DNA of 63,214 bases, the filler included, from Octopus bimaculoides (lineage: Eukaryota), in NCBI RefSeq assembly GCF_001194135.2. It is 4 parts of 4 records of this genome, joined end to end, with 100 filler letters (N's around TTAATTAATTAA, not from the genome) between each part and the next. Parts side by side here need not be neighbours in the genome. Positions count along the whole stretch, not along the records: positions 12,939 to 34,693 come from NC_068982.1; 3 more parts are not named here. The stretch is one strand, 5' to 3'. The notes under the pieces are model-generated. The model saw only the letters and a program-made list of their open reading frames with translations, had not been told where the DNA came from and searched no databases. Positions 12,950 through 34,290 of this stretch are shown in pieces; positions within the stretch are counted from its first letter, which is position 1; each line of letters opens with the position of its first letter. Made by a program: the position numbers and the translations under genes.

Positions 12950-13170
12950 ATTATAGCCTCAGGCCGACCAAAACCTTGTGAGTGAATTTCGTACTTGGAA
13001 ACTGAAAGAAGACTGTCGTATATATGTGTATATTTGTGTATGTGTGTACCTGTGTTTTGTGTTTGTACCCCCAACCATTGCTTGACAACTGATGTTGGTG
13101 TGTTTATATTCCTGTAACTTTAAAAGACACTGAAAGAATGAGTACTAGGCTTACAAAGAATAAATCTAGT
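12950..13170 (+). mobile_element. SINE family C, partial
   Basis: Central part of the family C consensus next to a gap. Confidence 0.8.
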
Positions 13171-13613
13171 AGGTGGGAAATGATCAGCCGCTGTTTAAGT
13201 AAATATGAGAATTTATTGTTCTATTTATGTAAGTACAGTCTACCGATACACTCAAATCTACGCTTTATAGGTATTCCAGAACAAATGAAATGTATATAGT
13301 ATATCAAAAACGCTGAATAGACTTTAATGACACAGGTTTGCGACTTAATTTTCATTTAGTCAAACCCTTTCATCTTCAAACTTTAATCGAGCGCTAAAGA
13401 CCTACATCATTATTATCTCCCCATTTAAAAAAAGTATATAGTACAGAGAACGTATTCATAATTGGGTGACCCAGGATACTGAAAACAAGGAATATTTTCA
13501 GAGTCGTAGTTATTACAACGCAGGTGATGTAATTCAAAGTGTAAAGTTTCTAGAGAGTAATCCAGTACGTTGTCAACTCGCATTGTTCCAATTCTGTCTT
13601 TATCATATGGTTA

Positions 13614-14700: not shown

Positions 14701-14769
14701 CGTGGAGCCAAAATAGTTGCACAATAATTTAGAGTTGGCAAACCCTCTAAGTTTCTTTTCTAAATTTAG

Positions 14770-14844
14770 GTGACAATCCTGAAACCGGAACAGCCACCCA
14801 CCAACTGAAGACAACAGAAAGTTTCACCATTTCTCCAATAACAG
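14770..14844 (+). CDS. Thr-rich stalk exon of the LDLa gene
   Basis: ttttctaaatttag| acceptor, |gtatgt donor, 75 nt, phase 1-1, open: GDNPETGTATHQLKTTESFTISPIT. Confidence 0.7.
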
Positions 14845-20734: not shown

Positions 20735-20797
20735 ATAATCAAAGTCGTACAGTACTAACAAACCAGATGACCACCACTGACGATTCACTTACAACGG
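20735..20797 (+). CDS. Thr-rich stalk exon (duplicate copy 1)
   Basis: ttttttacag| acceptor, |gtattt donor, 63 nt, phase 1-1: DNQSRTVLTNQMTTTDDSLTT; paralogous to 22304-22375. Confidence 0.8.
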
Positions 20798-21208: not shown

Positions 21209-21973
21209 NNNNNNNNNNNNNNNNNNNNNNNNNNNNNNNNNNNNNNNNNNNNNNNNNNNNNNNNNNNNNNNNNNNNNNNNNNNNNNNNNNNNNNNNNNNN
21301 NNNNNNNNNNNNNNNNNNNNNNNNNNNNNNNNNNNNNNNNNNNNNNNNNNNNNNNNNNNNNNNNNNNNNNNNNNNNNNNNNNNNNNNNNNNNNNNNNNNN
21401 NNNNNNNNNNNNNNNNNNNNNNNNNNNNNNNNNNNNNNNNNNNNNNNNNNNNNNNNNNNNNNNNNNNNNNNNNNNNNNNNNNNNNNNNNNNNNNNNNNNN
21501 NNNNNNNNNNNNNNNNNNNNNNNNNNNNNNNNNNNNNNNNNNNNNNNNNNNNNNNNNNNNNNNNNNNNNNNNNNNNNNNNNNNNNNNNNNNNNNNNNNNN
21601 NNNNNNNNNNNNNNNNNNNNNNNNNNNNNNNNNNNNNNNNNNNNNNNNNNNNNNNNNNNNNNNNNNNNNNNNNNNNNNNNNNNNNNNNNNNNNNNNNNNN
21701 NNNNNNNNNNNNNNNNNNNNNNNNATATGTGTGTGTGTGTATGTGTGTGTGTGTATACATATATATTTATATATATTATATATATGTACACACATATATA
21801 TATATGTATATATATATACATATATGTATATATACATATACATATATATATACATATATATATATGTACATATATATATACATATATATATACACACATA
21901 TATATATACATGCAATTTTAAAGCAATTTTGGGCGGTCAAGTGAATAAACATCTTTAAAATTGCATTTTCAAA

Positions 21974-22120: not shown

Positions 22121-22303
22121 ACACTTTGATAATAAACAACAAGGAGGAATAGATGTTAGATTTAACTTTAAATACGATAATCACTGCAACTCTTTGATAT
22201 AATCAATCAATCAATACAAACGTCTTTGTGAAGAAAATATTTTTAAACATATTTATTGTCATTTTTATTCATTTCATTTCCATTCCTGTTTTGTCTTCAA
22301 CAG

Positions 22304-22375
22304 ATAATCGAAAACATATATCCGGTACAATACTAACAAACCAAACGACCACCACAGATGATTCACTTACAACAG
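22304..22375 (+). CDS. Thr-rich stalk exon (duplicate copy 2)
   Basis: ttgtcttcaacag| acceptor, |gtattt donor, 72 nt, phase 1-1: DNRKHISGTILTNQTTTTDDSLTT. Confidence 0.8.
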
Positions 22376-22469
22376 GTATTTGACTGATGTTTTGACGATT
22401 CATTTCTTAAATGAACTCAATAATTCATTTATATATAGACATAGCTAAACTTGTATTTATAAGAAAAGG

Positions 22470-22960
22470 AAATCTTCACTTCAAAAAACATAACGTTGCA
22501 CCTAAAATTGAAGCTAGTAAACTGATATATTATGACGGTTGTTCTTTTCTGGCCTGAAACTTGGGCAATGTGCAGAGCAATGGAAAAAAAGAAAGATGCC
22601 CTTGAGATGCGAATCTTTCGCAGATCGGGAAGAATAAGCTGGGAAGACAGGGTAACAGACACTGCAGTACTAGAAAAGATGAAAGTATAACGACACCTAT
22701 TGTCGAAAAATTAAGTCCATGAAGTTATCTTATCTTGGACATAAACACACCATGAGTCACTGTCCGAGAAGTTGTGGAAACAGAGCAACAGGCTGTGAAA
22801 GACGTTTGTGAACTAACGATATCAAAGAATGGGAAACAGCAGTCATGGCTGATTGTATACTCGCAGCACAAAGGGAGCTGGAAAGTCTTGGCAAACCGAC
22901 ACCTTGAACACAGGTTGAGCAGGCACCTGGTTGGTGGCTGATGGACATAGGTCATTTATA
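22470..22960 (+). mobile_element. RTE-clade LINE 3' fragment
   Basis: VLFWPETWAMCRAMEKKKDALEMRIFRRSGRISWEDRVTDTAVLEK matches the RTE LYGxETW..FEMxxxRRxLxISWxDRVTN motif; multiple stops. Confidence 0.8.
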
Positions 22961-23149
22961 TAGACGTGTGACAAACGTATTTCTTCACAGTACCAAATAA
23001 TGTCAGGGAAACGGAAAAAGTAACATCTAATTTTCGAAATTATAAGGCAAAACTATTTCTAACAGAATAATCAGAGGTTCGGAGAAAATCATTTGCAGAA
23101 TTTCTTCTGGTTTTTCAAATTCCGATTTCAAATTCCACCCAACTAAGAA

Positions 23150-23221
23150 TGTAAAGAACTTGAATAAATGCCGCTAACCATTTCGTATGACGTGCTAACA
23201 ATTCTGCCAGTTCGCCGCTTT
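23150..23221 (-). mobile_element. SINE family B head fragment
   Basis: GCCGCTAACCATTTCG..GTGCTAACAATTCTGCCAGTTCGCCGC is the reverse complement of the family B head. Confidence 0.7.
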
Positions 23222-24660
23222 ATAGGGTAGTTACACAACAAAGATTCACGTAAAGAATGAAGCTACAAAGTATAAAGTCGGTTGCATAGACGACAGCTGT
23301 CAGGTCGTGCACGTGTATGACCATCACTGGCAAGTTATTTTATTCTAGACGTTAAAGACAATTGTTGTCAACAATACCCATGCTGAAATCTAAAGACAGT
23401 AACAGTCGATACAATACCACTATGACCTTCATCCACAAAACAAAGTAATCCAGAAACGAGCAAGAGCAAAATATTTGGCTTCGCAAAGAGGCGGGTGTCA
23501 TTTCCGAATTTCTTTCTTCTAAAGAGATGTCTAAACAGAAACATCTCTCACACCCAGCTGTTGGATAGCCGTTGACTCTACTGAGTTCATCAGTCTTTGA
23601 TAATGTTGAAATGATTTTTTGTTTTATGTTTTCCATGTTTGTTCTATCATAATCAACAACCAGAAGTTGATGAGGAGGTCTGACCTCTTTGCTCAACTTC
23701 GATGTTTATCTTTTCGTGGTGGCGGTGATGGTAGTGGTGGTGATGTGGGTACGTGCTTATTACTTTGGTTATCTGTGACGAATCACAAGTAACACCCAAA
23801 ATTTTAATGAAATGTTTTGATTGGTGTAAAATGGTAAATGTCTTTAAGTGCAGAACATCGACAGAAACATAAATGTAGCACCTGAAGAAGTATCTACATT
23901 ATAATGAGGACCAAAACTTCATATTCAGAGATGCTAAGAATAATTTTAAATTATATCTTATGAATATGAAAAATTCCTAACTAATGAACGTAGGCTGCCG
24001 AAACATAAGTTGTGTTGCATAAATAAAGCCTTTGAATTCCCATCATAGGAAACGAAAACGTACAGAGTTCCTGAAAATAGATACCAAGCGCAAAATATTG
24101 AATTGTACGAAAAAATTGTCCAAGAAAGGGAGGTGGAGTGAATAAAAAAATTATAGTTAAATAAAATGACACTTCCTAAGAAAAACTTAAAAGGGGAGAT
24201 GTTGTAGGAAATTAGTAATAATGATGCACGAATGGAATAACCTAATCACTATAAGTAAAGAGAAGTGCGTGAAGTACCGGAGATGATCAGAGATGATCGT
24301 GATTTTACTGGTTTTACTAAGTATACTGTATGCCGAAGTGAGAGTTATAACAATCCAACATTTTAAGGATATACCAAGTACCGAAGATAAACCATAATAT
24401 TGGGTCATTAGTAGTTTAAATGTGGTCACTCAGTCTGCTACAAATAATAGCCAAATTTTCCTCTCAAATTATGCCTTTATAAAAAGAAGAATATGTTAAA
24501 TATAGTTCTATACATGCTATTTATGGAAAGAAAAATGATGAGAAACCAGCGGTTAGATTATCTTTGATCATTGGCCTAGTCAATATAAACAACATTTTAC
24601 TTACTTTTCATTTTACTGATTTCACATTTTACTGATTTCACATTTTATTTTCCCCTCCAG

Positions 24661-24938
24661 AATCCAATGGAAACAAATGTATCTGTCGCTGCAATAAAAC
24701 GCCTATCATACCTTCGGAGACAGAAGAACAACTTGAGAAACGTATGCAAGAAACGCGGAAAGAACTTACAGTTGAAAAGAAAGCAACTTCTCAATATTTA
24801 GCTACGAAAATCAGTGCCCCGGATGAGCGCACATCCTCCTAGACTATGGGTGTTGTAGCAATTTTTATGCTGTCTGTAGTTGGTGGATTAATCGTCATTC
24901 CAGACGTCTTATCTTTGATAAAAAAAAAACATTTCTGA
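24661..24938 (+). CDS. Terminal exon: CxCxC + helical juxtamembrane module, in-frame TAG at 24840-24842, then TM helix and short basic tail
   Basis: tttattttcccctccag| acceptor, phase 1: ESNGNKCICRCNKTPIIPSETEEQLEKRMQETRKELTVEKKATSQYLATKISAPDERTSS*TMGVVAIFMLSVVGGLIVIPDVLSLIKKKHF* (TGA 24936-24938). Confidence 0.85.
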
Positions 24939-26499
24939 ACGCTTCTAGTGTGGGGTTTTTTTTCAGTAGTATTTACTTTTATGATTTGATAATTTTTGCA
25001 CCGAATAGCTACGAAGTAAAGATATGATTAGATACCACCAATTTTTTTCCCCTACCATGCATAATATCCGTTAAATATTGCTAATATCGACTTGGATAAA
25101 TGCATGCAACCAAAATATGGATTTAATTAAATATTGGTTTATGGTACAGCACATGCACGCACACACAAAAGTCGATACTTGCACAAATGTAAGTATATAA
25201 CAGACTGCACACGTCGGCCTTTAAGTGCACCTTACTACATGAATTTGTAACTAATGCTGTTTTTTTTTTACTTTCAATTTTGACAACACTCTTCCTCTCG
25301 CTTTCGTTCGTAAAAAGATAATGATATTCCAAGTATTACTCTCCCAAGTAATCTAGCTTTATTATAGCCAAACTCTCCATATTTTCCATGTCTATTGTGA
25401 TAATCCCTAATCTACTGGAACGCGACCAATATTTCAATGATGGAAAGAGTAGTAAGAAACCATCTTCATCACTTTGGGTTACTTCCATACACTGTGACCA
25501 CCTGTACGATTTCCATAGAAACAGATCAAAGGCAAATCTTTCCTAATCATGAGCTCAGGCCCTTGAGAACTTTGGTGAAAACAATTTTCTTATATTGACC
25601 ATCTGCAATGCATTTCACTCTATGTGACACGTGATCCTATCAATGTTGCATGCCTATGGATTAAATACGCCTTTCATCTCTTGGGTCAGAATTTACCTTG
25701 TCAGACCGCGCCATCGTAACACGTGGCGGTAAGAATTTTTTTCAGCCAACGTACTTTTACTTTAGGCTTACTTCAAATATCGATTTATCTTTCCAACCTA
25801 CGACTTTCTGTAAGCAAAGAAGCCCTCACTATTATTTCTAAACACACACGCATACTCTCATCGTCATTCCACGTTAACTTTCCTCATACAGATGTCACAT
25901 ATATGTAAACTAGACAACTCACGTCAAACGTATTATACTTTTGTATACAGGGACCACAAAAATATCCTCCAATGATAACAATAATTCTTTCAACAGCACT
26001 AAGACACGATTGCAGCATATGTTATGAAATCAATACACTCGCCTTACGATTGCACAACATACATTCAAATGAAAATCTCTAACAATATTCCATGATGATA
26101 ATGTACACTCCCAATCAAGTTTCGGTCTCTTCTAGACGAAATCGTTTTTCAGACTTTATCAGCTGATAGCTCTCCCACCCTCACTCATCACTTAGTTCAT
26201 ATACGATCCGCACTAGACCACTGCTCATATATTTGATATAGTGCTATTAAATACAAATATGTTTTAAACTGCACACAAAAGATAAATGATTAGCAGTCAT
26301 ACGCATTAACTAATAATAGCCCTGAGGCAACGAACACACTGTTTCGGGGATTTTTGCCTCCTTTTTCAGACGACTACAACGATTTCTACGTCTTTCCAAT
26401 GAACAGGCTCATTGGATAACTTCCACGTTATCCGAGAGATGTGGCATTCGTGAATATGTAGAAGCGCGTAGTGTCGGTACAGCTATCGAACGTGGTGGC

Positions 26500-27200
26500 C
26501 TTAGTAAGAAACTCTGTGTCCAGGACGCGAATGGATTGTTAGTGGATCATATATCCGAAAAAGAAGCACACTCTAAAAGTTAGCGATGTCTGTACAACCA
26601 CAGGTCCTCTTTTAGGATTCCGGAAAGCTGTTACGTCACGCCTTGGCCAGTCATGTGCGGTGCCTTAAGGATAAAGGAACTCCATACGAAATTAAATGGA
26701 GGATCATTGAGCAGCCAGAGCCCTGTATAAACGGGAGTGGACGATGCCAGCTTTGCATAGCAGAGCAAGCAATGATCCCTAACGATTTACTGAAACCGAG
26801 ATATATCTTAAACGCAAGACGTGACATCTGTAAATCACGCCTCTATTTCAAACGCTACCTGCTGCAGGCTTGGGATTCCCCGTTCGTCGATTAGAGCTGT
26901 AAAAATTACTTGCAGACCGGAACCAGCATAAGAGCGGAGATTCCCTGTTGACCCTTTAGGTCCATAAGATTTGCCAACCAGACAGGTCTCAGAGAGATAA
27001 CTCGTCCCGTTTAAAGCTCAAAATTCTTTTGTTTATAAATTAAATGACCGCAACGGTTTTCTATCTCCAGTTTGAAGAGAGGTTATATGCCTTCGGCCAT
27101 TAGAGTCTGACAATTCGTTTATAAATCTAAGCGCTTTATGGATGCGAAATCATTGATCACTCTACGACTAGACATATCTTTAACTCCATGTAAATGTGGT
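26500..27200 (+). mobile_element. Penelope-like element: GIY-YIG C-terminal part and 3' tail
   Basis: YNHRSSFR..(frameshift)LASHVRCLKDKGTPYEIKWRII..GSGRCQLCIAE..ILNARRDICKSR matches the PLE endonuclease C-terminus; hammerhead fold in the tail. Confidence 0.8.
27101..27164 (+). ncRNA. Type I hammerhead ribozyme fold, decayed (G8 to A)
   Basis: Stem I TAGAGT/ACTCTA, core CTGACAA, 10-bp stem II with G.U pairs, GAAA, stem III ATC-ATT-GAT, triplet AUC. Confidence 0.65.
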
Positions 27201-27802
27201 TTTCGTCACTGTTTACAGTTTTGTTCCATTTGTTTTCAAAATTGGTATCCTGATTAAGTTTTGTTTACTAATTATGAAAACGAAATTCATTTTTCCTATA
27301 AAGCCATAATTAAAAAGTTGTTAGTCTTTAGAATTTGCAAAATTTGGGTATTTTAGCCAATCAGAAGCAAGTATTTTACATATCACCATGGAGGAAATTT
27401 GTATTTCCATTGTAACGAAAGCAAGTAAACACCACGTGTTGCATAGCTGATTGCGAAGAACTGTTTCCATAGTGACCAAAGATGCTGCGCTTGTGTACAA
27501 GGAGGAGAAGGTGGTACGAGAAAGATAATTTATTTTATAAAATCCGAGTTTAATGTTTTGATATGCCGATGTCCCCCTCCTCCCTGATGATGGAATAGGC
27601 AGCGAAACATGTTGCTTTCTGATTGGCTGAAATTCTGAAATTGAATACCTGTGAAATTTTTGCAAAATTTTTCTAGAATAAATGAAAAAATTCGGATTCA
27701 GCGTCAAAAATTACATATGATACATTAAATCCTATATTTTTTTTTTTTTTTTTTGTGTGGGGAGATAATTGTAAACAGTGACGAAAACCACAAAGGTCCA
27801 TA

Positions 27803-27882: not shown

Positions 27883-28238
27883 NNNNNNNNNNNNNNNNNN
27901 NNNNNNNNNNNNNNNNNNNNNNNNNNNNNNNNNNNNNNNNNNNNNNNNNNNNNNNNNNNNNNNNNNNNNNNNNNNNNNNNNNNNNNNNNNNNNNNNNNNN
28001 NNNNNNNNNNNNNNNNNNNNNNNNNNNNNNNNNNNNNNNNNNNNNNNNNNNNNNNNNNNNNNNNNNNNNNNNNNNNNNNNNNNNNNNNNNNNNNNNNNNN
28101 NNNNNNNNNNNNNNNNNNNNNNNNNNNNNNNNNNNNNNNNNNNNNNNNNNNNNNNNNNNNNNNNNNNNNNNNNNNNNNNNNNNNNNNNNNNNNNNNNNNN
28201 NNNNNNNNNNNNNNNNNNNNNNNNNNNNNNAATTTGCT

Positions 28239-28297
28239 TTAACCCTAACCCTAACCCTAACCCTAAACCCTAGGGTTAGGGTTAGGGTTAGGGTTAA
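28239..28297. repeat. Interstitial telomeric palindrome (CCCTAA)n-(TTAGGG)n
   Basis: TTAACCCTAACCCTAACCCTAACCCTAAACCCTAGGGTTAGGGTTAGGGTTAGGGTTAA, centre CCCTAGGG at 28268-28275. Confidence 0.95.
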
Positions 28298-30138
28298 TTG
28301 TTTCAGAATCGTTTGTTTATGTAGTCGGCGCTTAATGTATATCGGCTGAATGGACGTCAGTGATTGGTTGAAATTACAGAAATACGACAACTTTAACATG
28401 GAATAACTTATGGATTTCTTTTTTTTTTAAAGAAGACTAAGAGAAAAAGATGTTTTATATGACACATTCTACCAGTGTTCCAAGTTTCAAAGTGTTTCGT
28501 TAATGAAAAATGTGGCCCCCGTTTTAAAAAAGATCCCATTTACCCAATGTGGTATGCAATAGTTAGGAAGCAAACCTCTTACCGCACAGCCATGCCTACA
28601 AATACACGTGTGTGTGTATGTGTGTGCGTGCGCGCTTCAAGATTAGTTGATTGAGCGATTGAAAGTCAGTGAGTCAACAGCCATCATCGTACACTTAATC
28701 TGGATAAGTCCGTGTTCCAATTTTTTTGAGACACCAACACATGTTGTAGGTCATTACTAATATTTGTTTAATTCGATTAAACTAATTTATTATGTGCAGC
28801 TGTTCGTATCGAAGGAACATATTCTAAAATAACAAATGTCACCCAAAAGCAGTAAGCTTCCTTGTAAACATCGTCTTCTTTTATATAAACTGGAGGTGTG
28901 AATGTGTTAGTAAATTTTCCTATCCATATATGTAAGTCTCTGTGTGTGTGTGCGCGCGCGCGTGCTTGCGTTCGTGCATGCATGTGCGTGTGTGTATGCA
29001 CGTGTACGTATGAGTGTGCGTGTAAGCAAATAACAACACTATTATCAAGATATTTTGTTTAATTTTGATGGAATATGAAGAGCCATAAAGTAGAAATGCA
29101 TCAAGGAGAGTATACAATAAAACTACACCCATATATACTGAATTTGTTGGCTACTGAGTTGCTATAAATATCTCATATTTACAGGGATTTGATTCGTTTC
29201 AGGGCATTGTTTCGCTTGTGTACTTTCGCACGAATTGATTTTTTAATTTTTTTTTTTTATTTTGCATTAACTGCCACAATATCGACTTTTCATTACAAAT
29301 AGCCTGGCAGAAAATACATGTCTCACACANNNNNNNNNNNNNNNNNNNNNNNNNNNNNNNNNNNNNNNNNNNNNNNNNNNNNNNNNNNNNNNNNNNNNNN
29401 NNNNNNNNNNNNNNNNNNNNNNNNNNNNNNNNNNNNNNNNNNNNNNNNNNNNNNNNNNNNNNNNNNNNNNNNNNNNNNNNNNNNNNNNNNNNNNNNNNNN
29501 NNNNNNNNNNNNNNNNNNNNNNNNNNNNNNNNNNNNNNNNNNNNNNNNNNNNNNNNNNNNNNNNNNNNNNNNNNNNNNNNNNNNNNNNNNNNNNNNNNNN
29601 NNNNNNNNNNNNNNNNNNNNNNNNNNNNNNNNNNNNNNNNNNNNNNNNNNNNNNNNNNNNNNNNNNNNNNNNNNNNNNNNNNNNNNNNNNNNNNNNNNNN
29701 NNNNNNNNNNNNNNNNNNNNNNNNNNNNNNNNNNNNNNNNNNNNNNNNNNNNNNNNNNNNNNNNNNNNNNNNNNNNNNNNNNNNNNNNNNNNNNNNNNNN
29801 NNNNNNNNNNNNNNNNNNNNNNNNNNNNNNNNNNNNNNNNNNNNNNNNNNNNNNNNNNNNNNNNNNNNNNNNNNNNNNNNNNNNNNNNNNNNNNNNNNNN
29901 NNNNNNNNNNNNNNNNNNNNNNNNNNNNNNNNNNNNNNNNNNNNNNNNNNNNNNNNNNNNNNNNNNNNNNNNNNNNNNNNNNNNNNNNNNNNNNNNNNNN
30001 NNNNNNNNNNTGACGCTGCTTCTAAGTTATGTGTTATACGTGCAGCTTCTCTTTTTTCCCCCTTTCTTTTTATTTTATTTTATTTTATTTTATTTTATTT
30101 TATTTTTTTGCCCTTCTTTTTTTTGTTGTAAACAATAT

Positions 30139-30667: not shown

Positions 30668-32020
30668 GAGCCTACGCTCTTCCACAGAAAAGAACATAGA
30701 AAGAAACAAAGAGAGAAACAAGGTGAGAAAAAATTGTGTGTAGTGGTTAGCGATTATCATGGCGAATACCGGACAGAAGGGTCACACAGGAGAGCTAAGA
30801 AGAAGGGAGATAACAAAGTGGTAGTGATCCCNNNNNNNNNNNNNNNNNNNNNNNNNNNNNNNNNNNNNNNNNNNNNNNNNNNNNNNNNNNNNNNNNNNNN
30901 NNNNNNNNNNNNNNNNNNNNNNNNNNNNNNNNNNNNNNNNNNNNNNNNNNNNNNNNNNNNNNNNNNNNNNNNNNNNNNNNNNNNNNNNNNNNNNNNNNNN
31001 NNNNNNNNNNNNNNNNNNNNNNNNNNNNNNNNNNNNNNNNNNNNNNNNNNNNNNNNNNNNNNNNNNNNNNNNNNNNNNNNNNNNNNNNNNNNNNNNNNNN
31101 NNNNNNNNNNNNNNNNNNNNNNNNNNNNNNNNNNNNNNNNNNNNNNNNNNNNNNNNNNNNNNNNNNNNNNNNNNNNNNNNNNNNNNNNNNNNNNNNNNNN
31201 NNNNNNNNNNNNNNNNNNNNNNNNNNNNNNNNNNNNNNNNNNNNNNNNNNNNNNNNNNNNNNNNNNNNNNNNNNNNNNNNNNNNNNNNNNNNNNNNNNNN
31301 NNNNNNNNNNNNNNNNNNNNNNNNNNNNNNNNNNNNNNNNNNNNNNNNNNNNNNNNNNNNNNNNNNNNNNNNNNNNNNNNNNNNNNNNNNNNNNNNNNNN
31401 NNNNNNNNNNNNNNNNNNNNNNNNNNNNNNNNNNNNNNNNNNNNNNNNNNNNNNNNNNNNNNNNNNNNNNNNNNNNNNNNNNNNNNNNNNNNNNNNNNNN
31501 NNNNNNNNNNNNNNNNNNNNNNNNNNNNNNNNNNNNNNNNNNNNNNNNNNNNNNNNNNNNNNNNNNNNNNNNNNNNNNNNNNNNNNNNNNNNNNNNNNNN
31601 NNNNNNNNNNNNNNNNNNNNNNNNNNNNNNNNNNNNNNNNNNNNNNNNNNNNNNNNNNNNNNNNNNNNNNNNNNNNNNNNNNNNNNNNNNNNNNNNNNGA
31701 GGAGGTTAGACAAAGAGGGGAGGAGAGTTGATCCCATGTGGCGCAAAGGAGCGAAAAGAGAAGATTAATCCCTGTTCACGGCGCAAACGGGAGTCCGGAT
31801 AGCCTCTGTGCAAGGACAATCCGAACACAGACAGGTGTTGCAAAGAGTGACCGGTAGAGCGGAAATGGCGTGAGACCGAGGTGTCATTGCCGAGGTGGAT
31901 GTCTCGGAGGTGTTCCGCGAACCGGTCAGCCAAGCAGCGTCTCGCTTGTCCGATATACAGAGAATGACAGAGAGAGCAGGAGATGCAATAGATGATATTG
32001 GTAAAAGTGCAGGTGAAACC
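30668..32020 (-). mobile_element. Penelope-like element: GIY-YIG endonuclease and pyrimidine-rich tail (spans gap)
   Basis: FTCTFTNIIYCISCSLCHSLYIGQARRCLADRFAEHLRDI..VSRHF..RREQGLIFSFRSFAPHGIN (31706-32020); tail ends in a truncated hammerhead-like hairpin at 30668-30687. Confidence 0.85.
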
Positions 32021-32663
32021 TTGTAGCCTGAAATAGTTTTCTCCTCCTTGAAAATGAATGAATGGTCTGGCAATTTTTTCCAATACAATCCAGTTTCGTC
32101 TACGTTAAAAATCTGTTCGGGAAGAAACCCGTTTCTTCGATGATTTTCTTTAATGCGTTAGAAAATTCTGCTGCTGCTTGTTCGTCAGCTGATGCACTTT
32201 CACCTTGCTTCTTAATAGAGTGATAACTTCTTCGCTCCTTAAATCTCATGAACTATCCTCGACTTGCCTTGAACTCTACATCTTTCTCACCTGGATATTT
32301 TTTCTTCGGGTCCTCAAACAAAGACAATGCTTTCTCTTGAATGATTTCTTGACTAATAGTGGCACGCTGACGATTCAACCTAACAATCCAAAGCGAAAGA
32401 AGACTTTCCATCTCTTCAAAGATTTTGTTTCTCTTCTTATTTATGACATTGTTCTTCATCCCTGAGGTTTCAGATTTGATATGTGCTAAAATCTTGTCCT
32501 TATTATGTACAATCGTCGATACAGTTGTCCGACTCACCCCAAAAGATCGTGCAATTGGGACCACTTTTTCACCTTTTTCATGGTGTTTTATCACAGCCAG
32601 TTTATCTTCCAGCGTTATAGTATGACACTTAGCACTTTCACTATGAATTTTCTTAGGAGCCAT
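32020..32663 (-). pseudogene. Tigger/pogo transposase N-terminal half (CENP-B-type HTH, Tc5 HTH, start of DDE)
   Basis: MAPKK..ITLEDKLAVIKHHEKGEKVVPIARSFGVSRTTVSTIV..EEMESLLSLWI..IIQEKALSLF..FKASRG*(TGG to TAG)FMRFK..; after one frameshift, FNVDETGLYWKKLPDHSFIFKEEK. Confidence 0.92.
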
Positions 32664-33319
32664 GGGGACAAAAAATAAAGTCACGAATGAATGAGAATGA
32701 GAAAGTAGCTGATAAACAGACGTAAACAAATCTAAATTCAAAACAATTGCGGAAATCACGAGTGACAACGACGCCTAACGGTAGATATTGGAACTACAGT
32801 GCAATATGAGCTCCGAAAGACCGATAAATAAGACAACACAGCTGATTTCCTGACTTCGTTCACTAAGCTACACTACTTTATGGTGTATATCTTAACATGT
32901 ACTGTACGTATTTTAATATGATTTAATACGCTTTTATTCTTATTTATTGTACAGTAACATGAAAAAGATCTAAATAGAAACCATTGACAAAATAGAAAAT
33001 AGTTTTGCTGTATTGTATTGTGCGTTAGTTGTTGCTTTTTCCATTTCCGTTTTATTACTGTAACTGTCGAGAAATATCTAAATGTCACACAGTCTACTTT
33101 TCCTATGTCTAAATAAATAAATGATTCATTGTGCTTATATAAGAAATATAATTTCAAAATATCAGATATTTACTTGGTGTAAGTGAATCGTCAATGATGG
33201 TCATTTGCTTCGCTAATACACACACACACACACACATATATCTATATGTATATATATATTTATATACACATATAGATATATCCACATATATATATATATA
33301 TATATGTGTATATATACTG

Positions 33320-34290
33320 TCGGTAGCTATGCCGATGATACAAAATTATCACAGGCAATAAAAAACCAAGAGGATGTCATAAGCTTACAGCGGGACCTAA
33401 ACTCAATATACATGCAGTTTAATGCTGGAAATTTTCAAGCACTGCACCATCAACTCACAAATATAGTACAATCTACATTTACAGGACCCGAGGGCACTAC
33501 AATCCTAGAGTCACAGGCAGTGAAAGACTTGGAGATCAGCATGTGCAATGACGCATCATTTCATATGCACATAAGCAAGATGGCAGCCAAGTGCAGACAA
33601 CTGGAAGGATGGATACTGAGGTCCTTCAAGACAAGAGACCAAGAAACTATGTTGACCTTGTGGAGAACCTTTGTTCTCAGCCGCCTGGACTACTGCTCCC
33701 AGTTATTGTCACCACATAGTGCCAAACTCACAGCGGAGCTTGAAGCAGTCCAACGCCACTACACTAAAAAGATTGAAACAGTGCAGCGGATAAGCTACGA
33801 GGATAGACTGAGAAAACTAAGCTTTACTCCCTGGAGCGAAGGCGTGAGAGATATGCAATAATATACATAGGGAAAATCCTAGAAGGGCTAGCACCTAACT
33901 TTGGCATTGAGTGAATACAAATGCGAGAACTGACCGCCATTGTATTGTAACAAAGGTATCATCCACTTCATCTAAATTATGGACCAGGATTCAAAGGCCC
34001 ACAGTTCTTCAATGCCCTGCTACAAAAATTTAAAAAATTGCCTAAGGTGCAAGTAGATGTCTTCAAAAAGGAACTAGGCATCCTCCTCTCCACAATACCG
34101 AATGAACTCGACATGAGGTACAAACGAGGGCAGCGGAATAAACCTCCATTATACACCAAATGTACCAACAGCTGGGATAAAGGTACATAGAGGAGTGGTG
34201 ATGTGAAACACCCAGACTGAGAAAGTCAAAAAGAACATGGTGGTGCTCCAGCATGACCACGGCCTCATGGTTGAAAGGAGTAAAAGAGTA
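33320..34290 (+). mobile_element. CR1-clade LINE, 5'-truncated RT C-terminal half with 3' tail
   Basis: YADDTK..LQRDL..ILRSFKTRD..LSRLDYCSQ..LEAVQR..YEDRLRKL; downstream stops and frameshifts; structured tail 34239-34290. Confidence 0.92.

What the first reader, a model, noticed from the sequence alone, without database searches (positions are those of the whole stretch)
24840..24938. In-frame UAG exactly between ectodomain and transmembrane anchor: possible secreted/membrane switch
Seen: the last exon reads ...ISAPDERTSS-TAG-TMGVVAIFMLSVVGGLIVIPDVLSLIKKKHF-TGA. The 31 codons after the TAG are undisrupted and encode a clean TM helix plus basic stop-transfer tail. The TAG is in the terminal exon, so the transcript should escape exon-junction NMD and yield a soluble LDLa-mucin protein. 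Established: UAG is the preferred ADAR triplet, UAG to UIG reads as Trp (as at the HDV amber/W site), and coleoid cephalopods recode extensively by A-to-I editing. Inference: editing or readthrough could toggle membrane anchoring, and the ATG two codons later could give a 30-aa TM micropeptide. The simplest alternative is a recent CAG/AAG to TAG mutation, polymorphism or assembly error. The context (UAG ACU) is not a classic readthrough motif, and only a weak local hairpin (ACAUCC/GGGUGU) surrounds it.
Basis: partly seen in the sequence, partly recalled or inferred. Interest (0 to 1): 0.8.

Follow-up and report, generated by a model that had tools for sequence, protein, structure and literature searches.

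The report
Recent nonsense mutation before membrane anchor
The in-frame TAG is real, but the same gene in Octopus vulgaris reads CAG (glutamine) there, so this is most likely an ordinary, recent stop mutation that cuts the membrane anchor off a small mucin-like protein, not a programmed RNA-editing switch.

Summary
Observation confirmed. The terminal exon (24661-24938, + strand) reads ...ISAPDERTSS-TAG-TMGVVAIFMLSVVGGLIVIPDVLSLIKKKHF-TGA. The 31 codons after the TAG are a genuine transmembrane (TM) segment, not a chance ORF.

The exon is the C-terminal module of a large mollusc-only family of single-pass membrane proteins, many of them mucin-like: 387 representative clusters, no Pfam model. 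In 138 family instances the TAG position is always a sense codon (K 42, Q 32, never W). The five closest octopus relatives all have Q there.

The syntenic O. vulgaris orthologue is 95% identical in protein and 88-92% in flanking DNA. It has CAG where the window has TAG, a single C-to-T transition. The window also carries an A10 run where O. vulgaris has A6. That shifts the frame of the last few codons.

Coding sequence before the TAG is under purifying selection (pS 0.157, pN 0.014). The 75 nt after it differ at one base, so the stop is young or the tail is still in use; the data cannot separate these.

I found no significant double-stranded RNA or editing-complementary sequence, no known readthrough context, and no conservation of the stop. 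Editing or readthrough is unsupported but not excluded without reads. Interest is low.

The parts
24661..24938 (+). Terminal coding exon. Its first two bases, AA, complete a split GAA codon, followed by SNGNKCICRCNKT...ISAPDERTSS, TAG, the TM tail and TGA.
   Evidence: Sequence and translation. Acceptor ...ccctccAG|AA is shared with the O. vulgaris gene model. A 59-aa database protein (P0001) starts at this exon boundary and ends at the TAG.
24840..24842 (+). In-frame TAG. It is derived from CAG (Gln) by one C-to-T transition at 24840.
   Evidence: O. vulgaris has CAG at the aligned position, L001 61790-61792. Q is present in the five closest octopus relatives aligned (P0003 also). The family has K or Q in 74 of 138 instances and never a stop or W.
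24846..24899 (+). Transmembrane helix MGVVAIFMLSVVGGLIVI, followed by the family's conserved Pro-Asp (24900-24905).
   Evidence: Kyte-Doolittle 19-residue maximum 2.52. Aligns with the TM segment of family members.
24920..24929 (+). A10 homopolymer, against A6 in O. vulgaris. The 4-nt difference shifts the frame, so the C-terminus is KKKHF* instead of KNISERF*.
   Evidence: Pairwise alignment. The 19 nt after the run, CATTTCTGAACGCTTCTAG, are identical in both species and end at the O. vulgaris stop. The direction of the change is not resolved.
24842..24881 (+). Small predicted RNA hairpin (9 bp + 5 bp) starting at the G of the TAG; the A of the TAG is unpaired.
   Evidence: dG -13.6 kcal/mol, z -2.0, 5 of 200 shuffles as good. 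O. vulgaris has a similar fold with z -1.3. The 200-nt context has z +0.94. Too short and too weak to count as an ADAR substrate.
22304..22375 (+). Penultimate exon (72 nt, phase 1-1) encoding NRKHISGTILTNQTTTTDDSLTT. Donor G|GT is at 22375/22376. It joins 24661 to give ...LTT-E-SNGNK.
   Evidence: Sequence. Matches O. vulgaris P0155 residues 112-134 and L001 53745-53825.
20735..20797 (+). Diverged duplicate of the Thr-rich exon (63 nt, phase 1-1; ...SRTVLTNQMTTTDDSLTT), with AG and GT boundaries. Use unknown.
   Evidence: tblastn and alignment.
14751..14844 (+). Candidate upstream exon (VSFLNLGDNPETGTATHQLKTTESFTISPIT, donor G|GT) resembling the penultimate coding segment of paralogue P0003. 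It is not part of the O. vulgaris model.
   Evidence: tblastn E 0.008. The region is syntenic with L001 44977-46211 at 92%. Weak evidence.

Best explanation
A young, lineage- or allele-specific nonsense substitution (CAG Gln to TAG, one C-to-T transition at 24840) lies in the terminal exon of a small mucin-like single-pass membrane protein. The protein belongs to a large, fast-evolving, mollusc-only family.

Translation stops after ...ISAPDERTSS, just before the TM helix. Any product therefore lacks its anchor: it is either a soluble or secreted remnant, or the first step towards a pseudogene. The stop is in the last exon and lengthens the 3'UTR by only 96 nt, so strong NMD is not expected (inference from the exon-junction rule).

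The TM ORF downstream is intact because too little time has passed for it to decay. The A10/A6 frameshift near its end may be the first sign of decay.

Shown: the ancestral codon, the homology and the synteny. Inferred: the fate of the product and the age of the mutation.
For: - The O. vulgaris orthologue P0155 (95% identity) reads ...DERTSSQTMGVVAIVMLSVVGGLIVIPDVLSLIKNISERF.
- Its locus L001 is collinear with the window at 88-92% nucleotide identity. It has CAG exactly where the window has TAG.
- Paralogues P0002/P0003 and the relatives P0004, P0005, P0013, P0016 all have Q.
- In 138 family instances the position is K 42, Q 32, R 17, T 13, A 12, V 9 and others, never W. Only the window's own protein ends before the TM.
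- Before the TAG there are 6 synonymous and 2 nonsynonymous differences in 177 nt (pS 0.157, pN 0.014), so the gene was recently under purifying selection.
- A second frame-changing difference (A10 against A6) lies 78 nt downstream of the TAG.
- There is no significant RNA structure or complementary sequence around the TAG.
Against: - The 75 nt after the TAG differ from O. vulgaris at only 1 base, against 6.5-10% in flanking non-coding DNA. That fits a very recent stop, but it fits continued translation of the tail equally well.
- No raw reads, second individual or RNA data could be reached. Fixation, heterozygosity and base-call error therefore remain untested.
- Only one true orthologue was found.
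Confidence: 0.8

Rival explanations
1. Base-call or assembly error in a gap-rich draft assembly: the animal really has CAG and an ordinary membrane-anchored protein. The A10 run could likewise be a homopolymer miscount. A heterozygous site where the assembler picked the rare allele is a close variant of this rival.
For: The piece is a draft scaffold with many N gaps. Two frame-breaking differences from the orthologue fall within 90 nt, while the rest of the tail is almost identical. No independent contig with the same product is on record.
Against: Real substitutions between the two species occur at 6.5-10% of flanking non-coding sites. That is far more frequent than consensus errors in a deep short-read assembly (general knowledge), so any given difference is much more likely to be real. 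A 59-aa protein ending at this TAG (P0001) is already in the public collection.
Confidence: 0.1
2. Programmed recoding. ADAR edits UAG to UIG (Trp), or ribosomes read through the UAG, in a fraction of transcripts. One gene would then give both a secreted and a membrane-anchored isoform.
For: The TM ORF is fully intact and nearly unchanged from the orthologue. UAG is the favoured ADAR triplet and coleoids edit heavily (established knowledge). Stop-loss UAG-to-UGG editing that joins adjacent ORFs is already recognised in coleoid editome work (PMC8382921). A small hairpin starts at the stop (z -2.0).
Against: - The stop is absent from the orthologue and from all paralogues, so it is not a conserved regulatory device.
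- Editing would give Trp, which is never seen at this position in the family, and would not restore Gln.
- The 200-nt context is less structured than shuffles (z +0.94).
- No inverted repeat among those reported (the 25 longest of 67) involves the site in 22300-27800.
- The best intermolecular duplex is matched by 10 of 40 shuffles.
- The hairpin is 9+5 bp with the target A unpaired, and it exists equally in O. vulgaris, which has no stop.
- UAG-ACU matches no known leaky context (established knowledge).
Confidence: 0.05
3. The ATG at 24846 initiates an independent 30-aa TM micropeptide.
For: The ATG has A at -3 and G at +4 (sequence), and the ORF is intact.
Against: The Met is simply the conserved [M/I] of the family motif Q-x-[M/I]-G, present in intact relatives. 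It lies about 180 nt into the exon, after a long translated ORF, where reinitiation is inefficient (general knowledge). No gene with this exact product is on record.
Confidence: 0.01

Closest known systems
Mollusc mucin-like single-pass membrane proteins sharing an unnamed C-terminal module. RefSeq calls members 'integumentary mucin C.1-like', 'mucin-22-like', 'IgGFc-binding protein-like' or 'WSC domain-containing'. Closest members: O. vulgaris P0155 (orthologue) and O. bimaculoides LOC106869241 (P0002/P0003).
   Same: Same CxCxC-...-ELTVxKKxTSxY...KISAPDxRxS[SA]-x-x-[M/I]-G motif, followed by a TM helix, Pro/x-Asp and a very short tail. Same exon structure and synteny as the O. vulgaris gene.
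   Different: The window's copy has TAG at the variable residue between the motif and the helix, where relatives have Q or K. It also has a 4-nt longer A run at the tail.
ADAR stop-loss (amber/W) recoding: the HDV amber/W site, and the UAG-to-UGG sites noted in coleoid editomes (PMC8382921).
   Same: A UAG followed by an open, meaningful reading frame, in an animal group with very heavy editing.
   Different: No supporting dsRNA was detected, the stop is not conserved in the sister species, and Trp is not a residue used at this position. No RNA evidence is available.
Programmed stop-codon readthrough extensions, e.g. the Drosophila readthrough genes (PMC3840789).
   Same: Coding-like sequence continues in frame after a stop.
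   Different: Readthrough genes keep the stop codon across species, with protein-like conservation beyond it. Here the orthologue has a sense codon, and the stop context is not a known leaky one.

Membership tests
Mollusc mucin-like TM-module family (unnamed, no Pfam model) | Juxtamembrane motif ELTV-x-KK-x-TS-x-Y-...-K-[IT]-SA-x-D-x-R-x-S-[SA] | tested here: met
   The window reads KELTVEKKATSQYLATKISAPDERTSS. 387 representative hits at E<=0.001, with the motif visible in most of the 150 listed; alignment A1. Every named member that was looked up is a mollusc. No Pfam hit covers this C-terminal module.
Mollusc mucin-like TM-module family (unnamed, no Pfam model) | TM helix, conserved Pro/x-Asp and a short tail directly after the motif, in one uninterrupted ORF | tested here: not met
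   The helix and PD are present in the DNA (24846-24905) but separated from the motif by TAG. This copy is a broken or truncated member by descent, not an intact one.
ADAR amber/W stop-loss recoding site | Target adenosine embedded in extended double-stranded RNA (local fold or editing-complementary sequence) | tested here: not met
   200-nt fold z +0.94. None of the reported inverted repeats (25 longest of 67) involves the site within 22300-27800. The duplex scan is no better than shuffles, 10/40. There is only a 9+5 bp hairpin with the A unpaired. Distant or trans partners were not searched.
ADAR amber/W stop-loss recoding site | A in DNA but G in a fraction of RNA reads | not testable with these tools
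   No read data. Exact-product look-ups found nothing.
ADAR amber/W stop-loss recoding site | Editable stop retained in related species (expected if it is functional) | tested here: not met
   O. vulgaris has CAG. The paralogues have Q.
Programmed stop-codon readthrough | Stop codon conserved in orthologues, with coding-type conservation downstream | tested here: not met
   Downstream conservation is present (1 difference in 75 nt), but the stop itself is absent from the orthologue.
Programmed stop-codon readthrough | Leaky context (e.g. UGA-C, UAG-CAR-YYA) or a spaced 3' stimulatory structure | tested here: inconclusive
   The context is UAG-ACU-AUG, which is not a known motif. The hairpin begins at the stop itself without a spacer and is marginal.
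Nonsense allele / incipient unitary pseudogene | Sense codon in orthologue and paralogues, reachable by one substitution | tested here: met
   CAG to TAG, a single transition.
Nonsense allele / incipient unitary pseudogene | Relaxed constraint or further lesions downstream of the stop | tested here: inconclusive
   There is one frame-shifting indel, A10 against A6, but only 1 substitution in 75 nt. Too few sites, and no outgroup to polarise the changes.
Nonsense allele / incipient unitary pseudogene | The variant is present in raw genomic reads, fixed or segregating | not testable with these tools
   No read archives are reachable.

The most novel reading that the evidence does not exclude
After a C-to-T mutation turned CAG into the ideal ADAR triplet UAG, the octopus edits a fraction of transcripts to UIG (Trp). 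One young gene would then make both a shed mucin-like ectodomain and a membrane-anchored form, with the ratio set by ADAR activity: a newly born, species-specific editing-dependent topology switch.
Probability: 0.04. Interest if true: 0.55.

Novelty: new member of a known kind. Interest (0 to 1): 0.13.

Why it matters
As it stands, little: it is one truncating substitution in one member of a large, rapidly turning-over gene family. It mostly serves as a caution that an intact ORF after a stop does not imply recoding when the stop is young. If RNA data showed editing, it would be a clean natural case of A-to-I editing controlling membrane anchoring. Stop-loss editing as such is already recognised in coleoids. 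The more useful by-product is the family itself: a conserved, mollusc-wide juxtamembrane-plus-TM module with no Pfam model and no known function.

Tried and rejected
1. Alternative 3' splice site at the AG of the TAG (cctcctAG|ACT). The upstream donors found are all phase 1. Joining them at 24843 would read the frame ...YGCCSNFYAVCSWWINRHSRR..., not the TM frame. Splicing therefore cannot rescue the anchor from these donors.
2. Independent copies of the locus. Exact-product look-ups for P0001, P0002, P0003, the 32-aa M-started ORF ending at the TAG, and the 30-aa micropeptide all returned nothing.
3. Chance ORF: rejected by hydrophobicity and homology.
4. Editing-complementary sequence: an inverted-repeat search and a duplex scan of 22377-27800 against shuffled controls found nothing specific.
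5. Rfam scan of the piece: no family at gathering score.
6. Other copies of the terminal exon in the piece: none.
8. A third large protein search was not spent. The profile search had already collected candidates sharing words with the window's exon and found a single orthologue.

Full report
**1. What is there**

On the + strand the sequence ...ccctccAG|AATCCAATGG opens an exon at 24661. Its frame reads SNGNKCICRCNKTPIIPSETEEQLEKRMQETRKELTVEKKATSQYLATKISAPDERTSS, then TAG (24840-24842). After that comes TMGVVAIFMLSVVGGLIVIPDVLSLIKKKHF and TGA at 24936-24938. The other two frames are closed.

Is the tail more than chance?
- Openness alone is not informative. In this AT-rich piece, 342 of 2094 stop-to-stop intervals (16%) are 31 codons or longer.
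- Only 3 of those 342 are as hydrophobic as this one.
- The tail is homologous to TM tails of related proteins (below).

It is therefore real, formerly or currently coding, TM sequence.

**2. What gene it is**

A word-indexed search with the exon found the window's own 59-aa product ending at the TAG (P0001). It also found two isoforms of O. bimaculoides LOC106869241 (P0002/P0003, 64% identical), which read ...ISAPDERVSSQTMGALAIIMLSVIAGLIIIPDILYFLKKIF.

An exhaustive HMMER search with P0002 gave 387 representative clusters at E<=0.001. Most of the 150 listed share the module ...ELTVxKKxTSxYxRxK[IT]SAxDxRxS[SA]-x-x-[M/I]-G, then a TM helix, then x-D and a short tail.

The named members are all molluscs: Octopus, Argopecten, Pecten, Mytilus, Saccostrea, Ostrea, Haliotis, Gigantopelta. 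The module sits behind very different ectodomains: Thr-rich mucin-like stretches, WSC, and IgGFc-binding plus EGF. No Pfam family covers the module.

Within the piece I can see these exons:
- The penultimate 72-nt Thr-rich exon (22304-22375, phase 1-1), which joins 24661 to give ...DDSLTT-E-SNGNK.
- A diverged duplicate of it at 20735-20797.
- A weak candidate exon at 14751-14844.

The 5' exons of the orthologous model map upstream of the piece. I saw no LDLa domain in the piece.

**3. The decisive comparison**

A profile search seeded with the window's exon and five octopus relatives found P0155. This is a 228-aa O. vulgaris protein, 95% identical over 97% of the exon. It reads ...NRKHISGTILTNQMTTTDDSLTTESNGSKCICHCNKTPIIPSETEEQLEKRMQETRKELTVEKKATSQYLATKISAPDERTSSQTMGVVAIVMLSVVGGLIVIPDVLSLIKNISERF.

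Its locus (L001, chromosome OX597815.1) is collinear with the window from about 13.2 kb to 29.3 kb, at 83-92% nucleotide identity (mostly 88-92%). It is therefore the orthologous locus in a different species.

In the base-by-base alignment the window's CCTCC-TAG-ACTATG faces CCTCC-CAG-ACTATG, one C-to-T transition. The five closest octopus relatives all have Q at this column. Across 138 family instances the column holds K 42, Q 32, R 17, T 13, A 12, V 9 and a few others. It never holds W. The window's product is the only protein that ends before the helix. The TAG is therefore derived and private to the window's lineage or individual.

A second difference lies 78 nt downstream. The window has A10 (24920-24929) where O. 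vulgaris has A6. This shifts the frame, so the tail ends KKKHF* instead of KNISERF*. The 19 nt after the run are identical in both species and end at the O. vulgaris stop codon. I cannot polarise this change. It may be a second lesion, a change on the O. vulgaris side, or a homopolymer miscount.

**4. Selection**

| Segment | Synonymous differences | Nonsynonymous differences | Rates |
|---|---|---|---|
| Before the TAG, 177 nt | 6 | 2 | pS 0.157, pN 0.014 |
| After the TAG, 75 nt | 0 | 1 (F/V) | pS 0, pN 0.018 |
| Flanking intron and downstream DNA | n/a | n/a | 6.5-10% divergence |

The region before the TAG has been under purifying selection. For the tail, suppose it had been neutral in the window's lineage since the species split. 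I would then expect about 5 differences, and seeing one or fewer has a probability of about 0.04. Under ordinary coding constraint I would expect about 4 (my arithmetic from the numbers). The stop is therefore younger than the split, or the tail is still used. These few sites cannot tell the two apart.

**5. Tests of the recoding idea**

- The 200 nt around the TAG fold less well than shuffles (z +0.94).
- A 9+5 bp hairpin starts at the G of the TAG (24842-24881; -13.6 kcal/mol; z -2.0; 5/200 shuffles). The target A is unpaired. O. vulgaris, which has no stop, has a similar fold (z -1.3). It was the best of three windows tried.
- None of the reported inverted repeats in 22300-27800 (the 25 longest of 67) involves the site.
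- The best intermolecular duplex between the site and the rest of 22377-27800 is equalled by 10 of 40 shuffled sites.
- UAG-ACU is not a known leaky readthrough context (established knowledge).
- Editing would give Trp. That neither restores Gln nor matches any residue seen at the position.

Stop-loss UAG-to-UGG editing between adjacent ORFs is already recognised and routinely handled in coleoid editome studies (PMC8382921). So even if it were true here, the mechanism would not be new; only its use as an anchoring switch would be.

**6. Conclusion**

The best explanation is a recent CAG-to-TAG nonsense substitution, fixed or segregating, that removes the membrane anchor of one member of a large, fast-evolving mollusc family (confidence about 0.8). 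The intact tail reflects youth, not programming.

The rivals are:
- an assembly or base-call error or a mis-chosen heterozygous allele (about 0.1);
- editing or readthrough (about 0.05);
- an independent micropeptide (about 0.01).

All of these come down to the same missing data, namely genomic and RNA reads at 24840/24841. I could not reach those data.

Noticed in passing
window 24661-24938; proteins P0002-P0157: The exon belongs to a conserved juxtamembrane + TM module (ELTVxKKxTSxY...SAxDxRxS[SA]xx[M/I]G, helix, xD). It is found in 387 representative protein clusters, every named one from a mollusc (cephalopods, bivalves, gastropods). It sits behind unrelated ectodomains (mucin-like, WSC, IgGFc-binding/EGF) and no Pfam model covers it: an uncharacterised, shuffled 'anchor exon'.
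   Followed up: partly
window 22304-22375, 20735-20797, and 33178-33219 (- strand): The Thr-rich 'TNQxTTTDDSLTT' phase 1-1 exon occurs three times in the piece together with similar flanking sequence, once inverted. This suggests local duplication of an exon-plus-intron unit. The O. vulgaris model uses only one copy.
   Followed up: partly
window 13040-13240 vs L001 44484-44597: Exon 3 of the O. vulgaris gene model (APATCTVNGQLYQSESQKMISICLNKSENTEHNLSFFL) aligns with the window only in its 3' half, and with a 12-nt gap. The 5' half faces unrelated sequence. Either that annotated exon is spurious or the two species differ in gene structure. The model also lacks an evident signal peptide.
   Followed up: partly
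window 24592-24647: A 16-nt tandem repeat (ACATTTTACTGACTTC x3.5) lies directly upstream of the terminal exon's polypyrimidine tract and acceptor. This stretch aligns poorly with O. vulgaris, unlike its surroundings.
   Followed up: no
window 32253-32768 (- strand): A 171-aa ORF with CENP-B N-terminal and Tc5 transposase DNA-binding domains (E 1.5e-11 and 1e-7): a pogo/Tigger-type transposase fragment. Other repeat-like ORFs (17.5-18.4 kb, 22526-22687, 31706-32083, 33304-33861) gave no Pfam hit.
   Followed up: partly
window 28240-28296: Back-to-back hexamer arrays, TAACCC x5 then TAGGGT x4, directly after an assembly gap (27883-28230): an interstitial telomere-like repeat in head-to-head orientation, or a scaffolding artefact.
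   Followed up: no
window 21209-21724, 27883-28230, 29330-30010, 30832-31698: Four large N gaps, flanked by long TA/CT/ACAT microsatellites. The piece is a draft-quality scaffold, which is relevant to how far single-base and homopolymer calls can be trusted.
   Followed up: no
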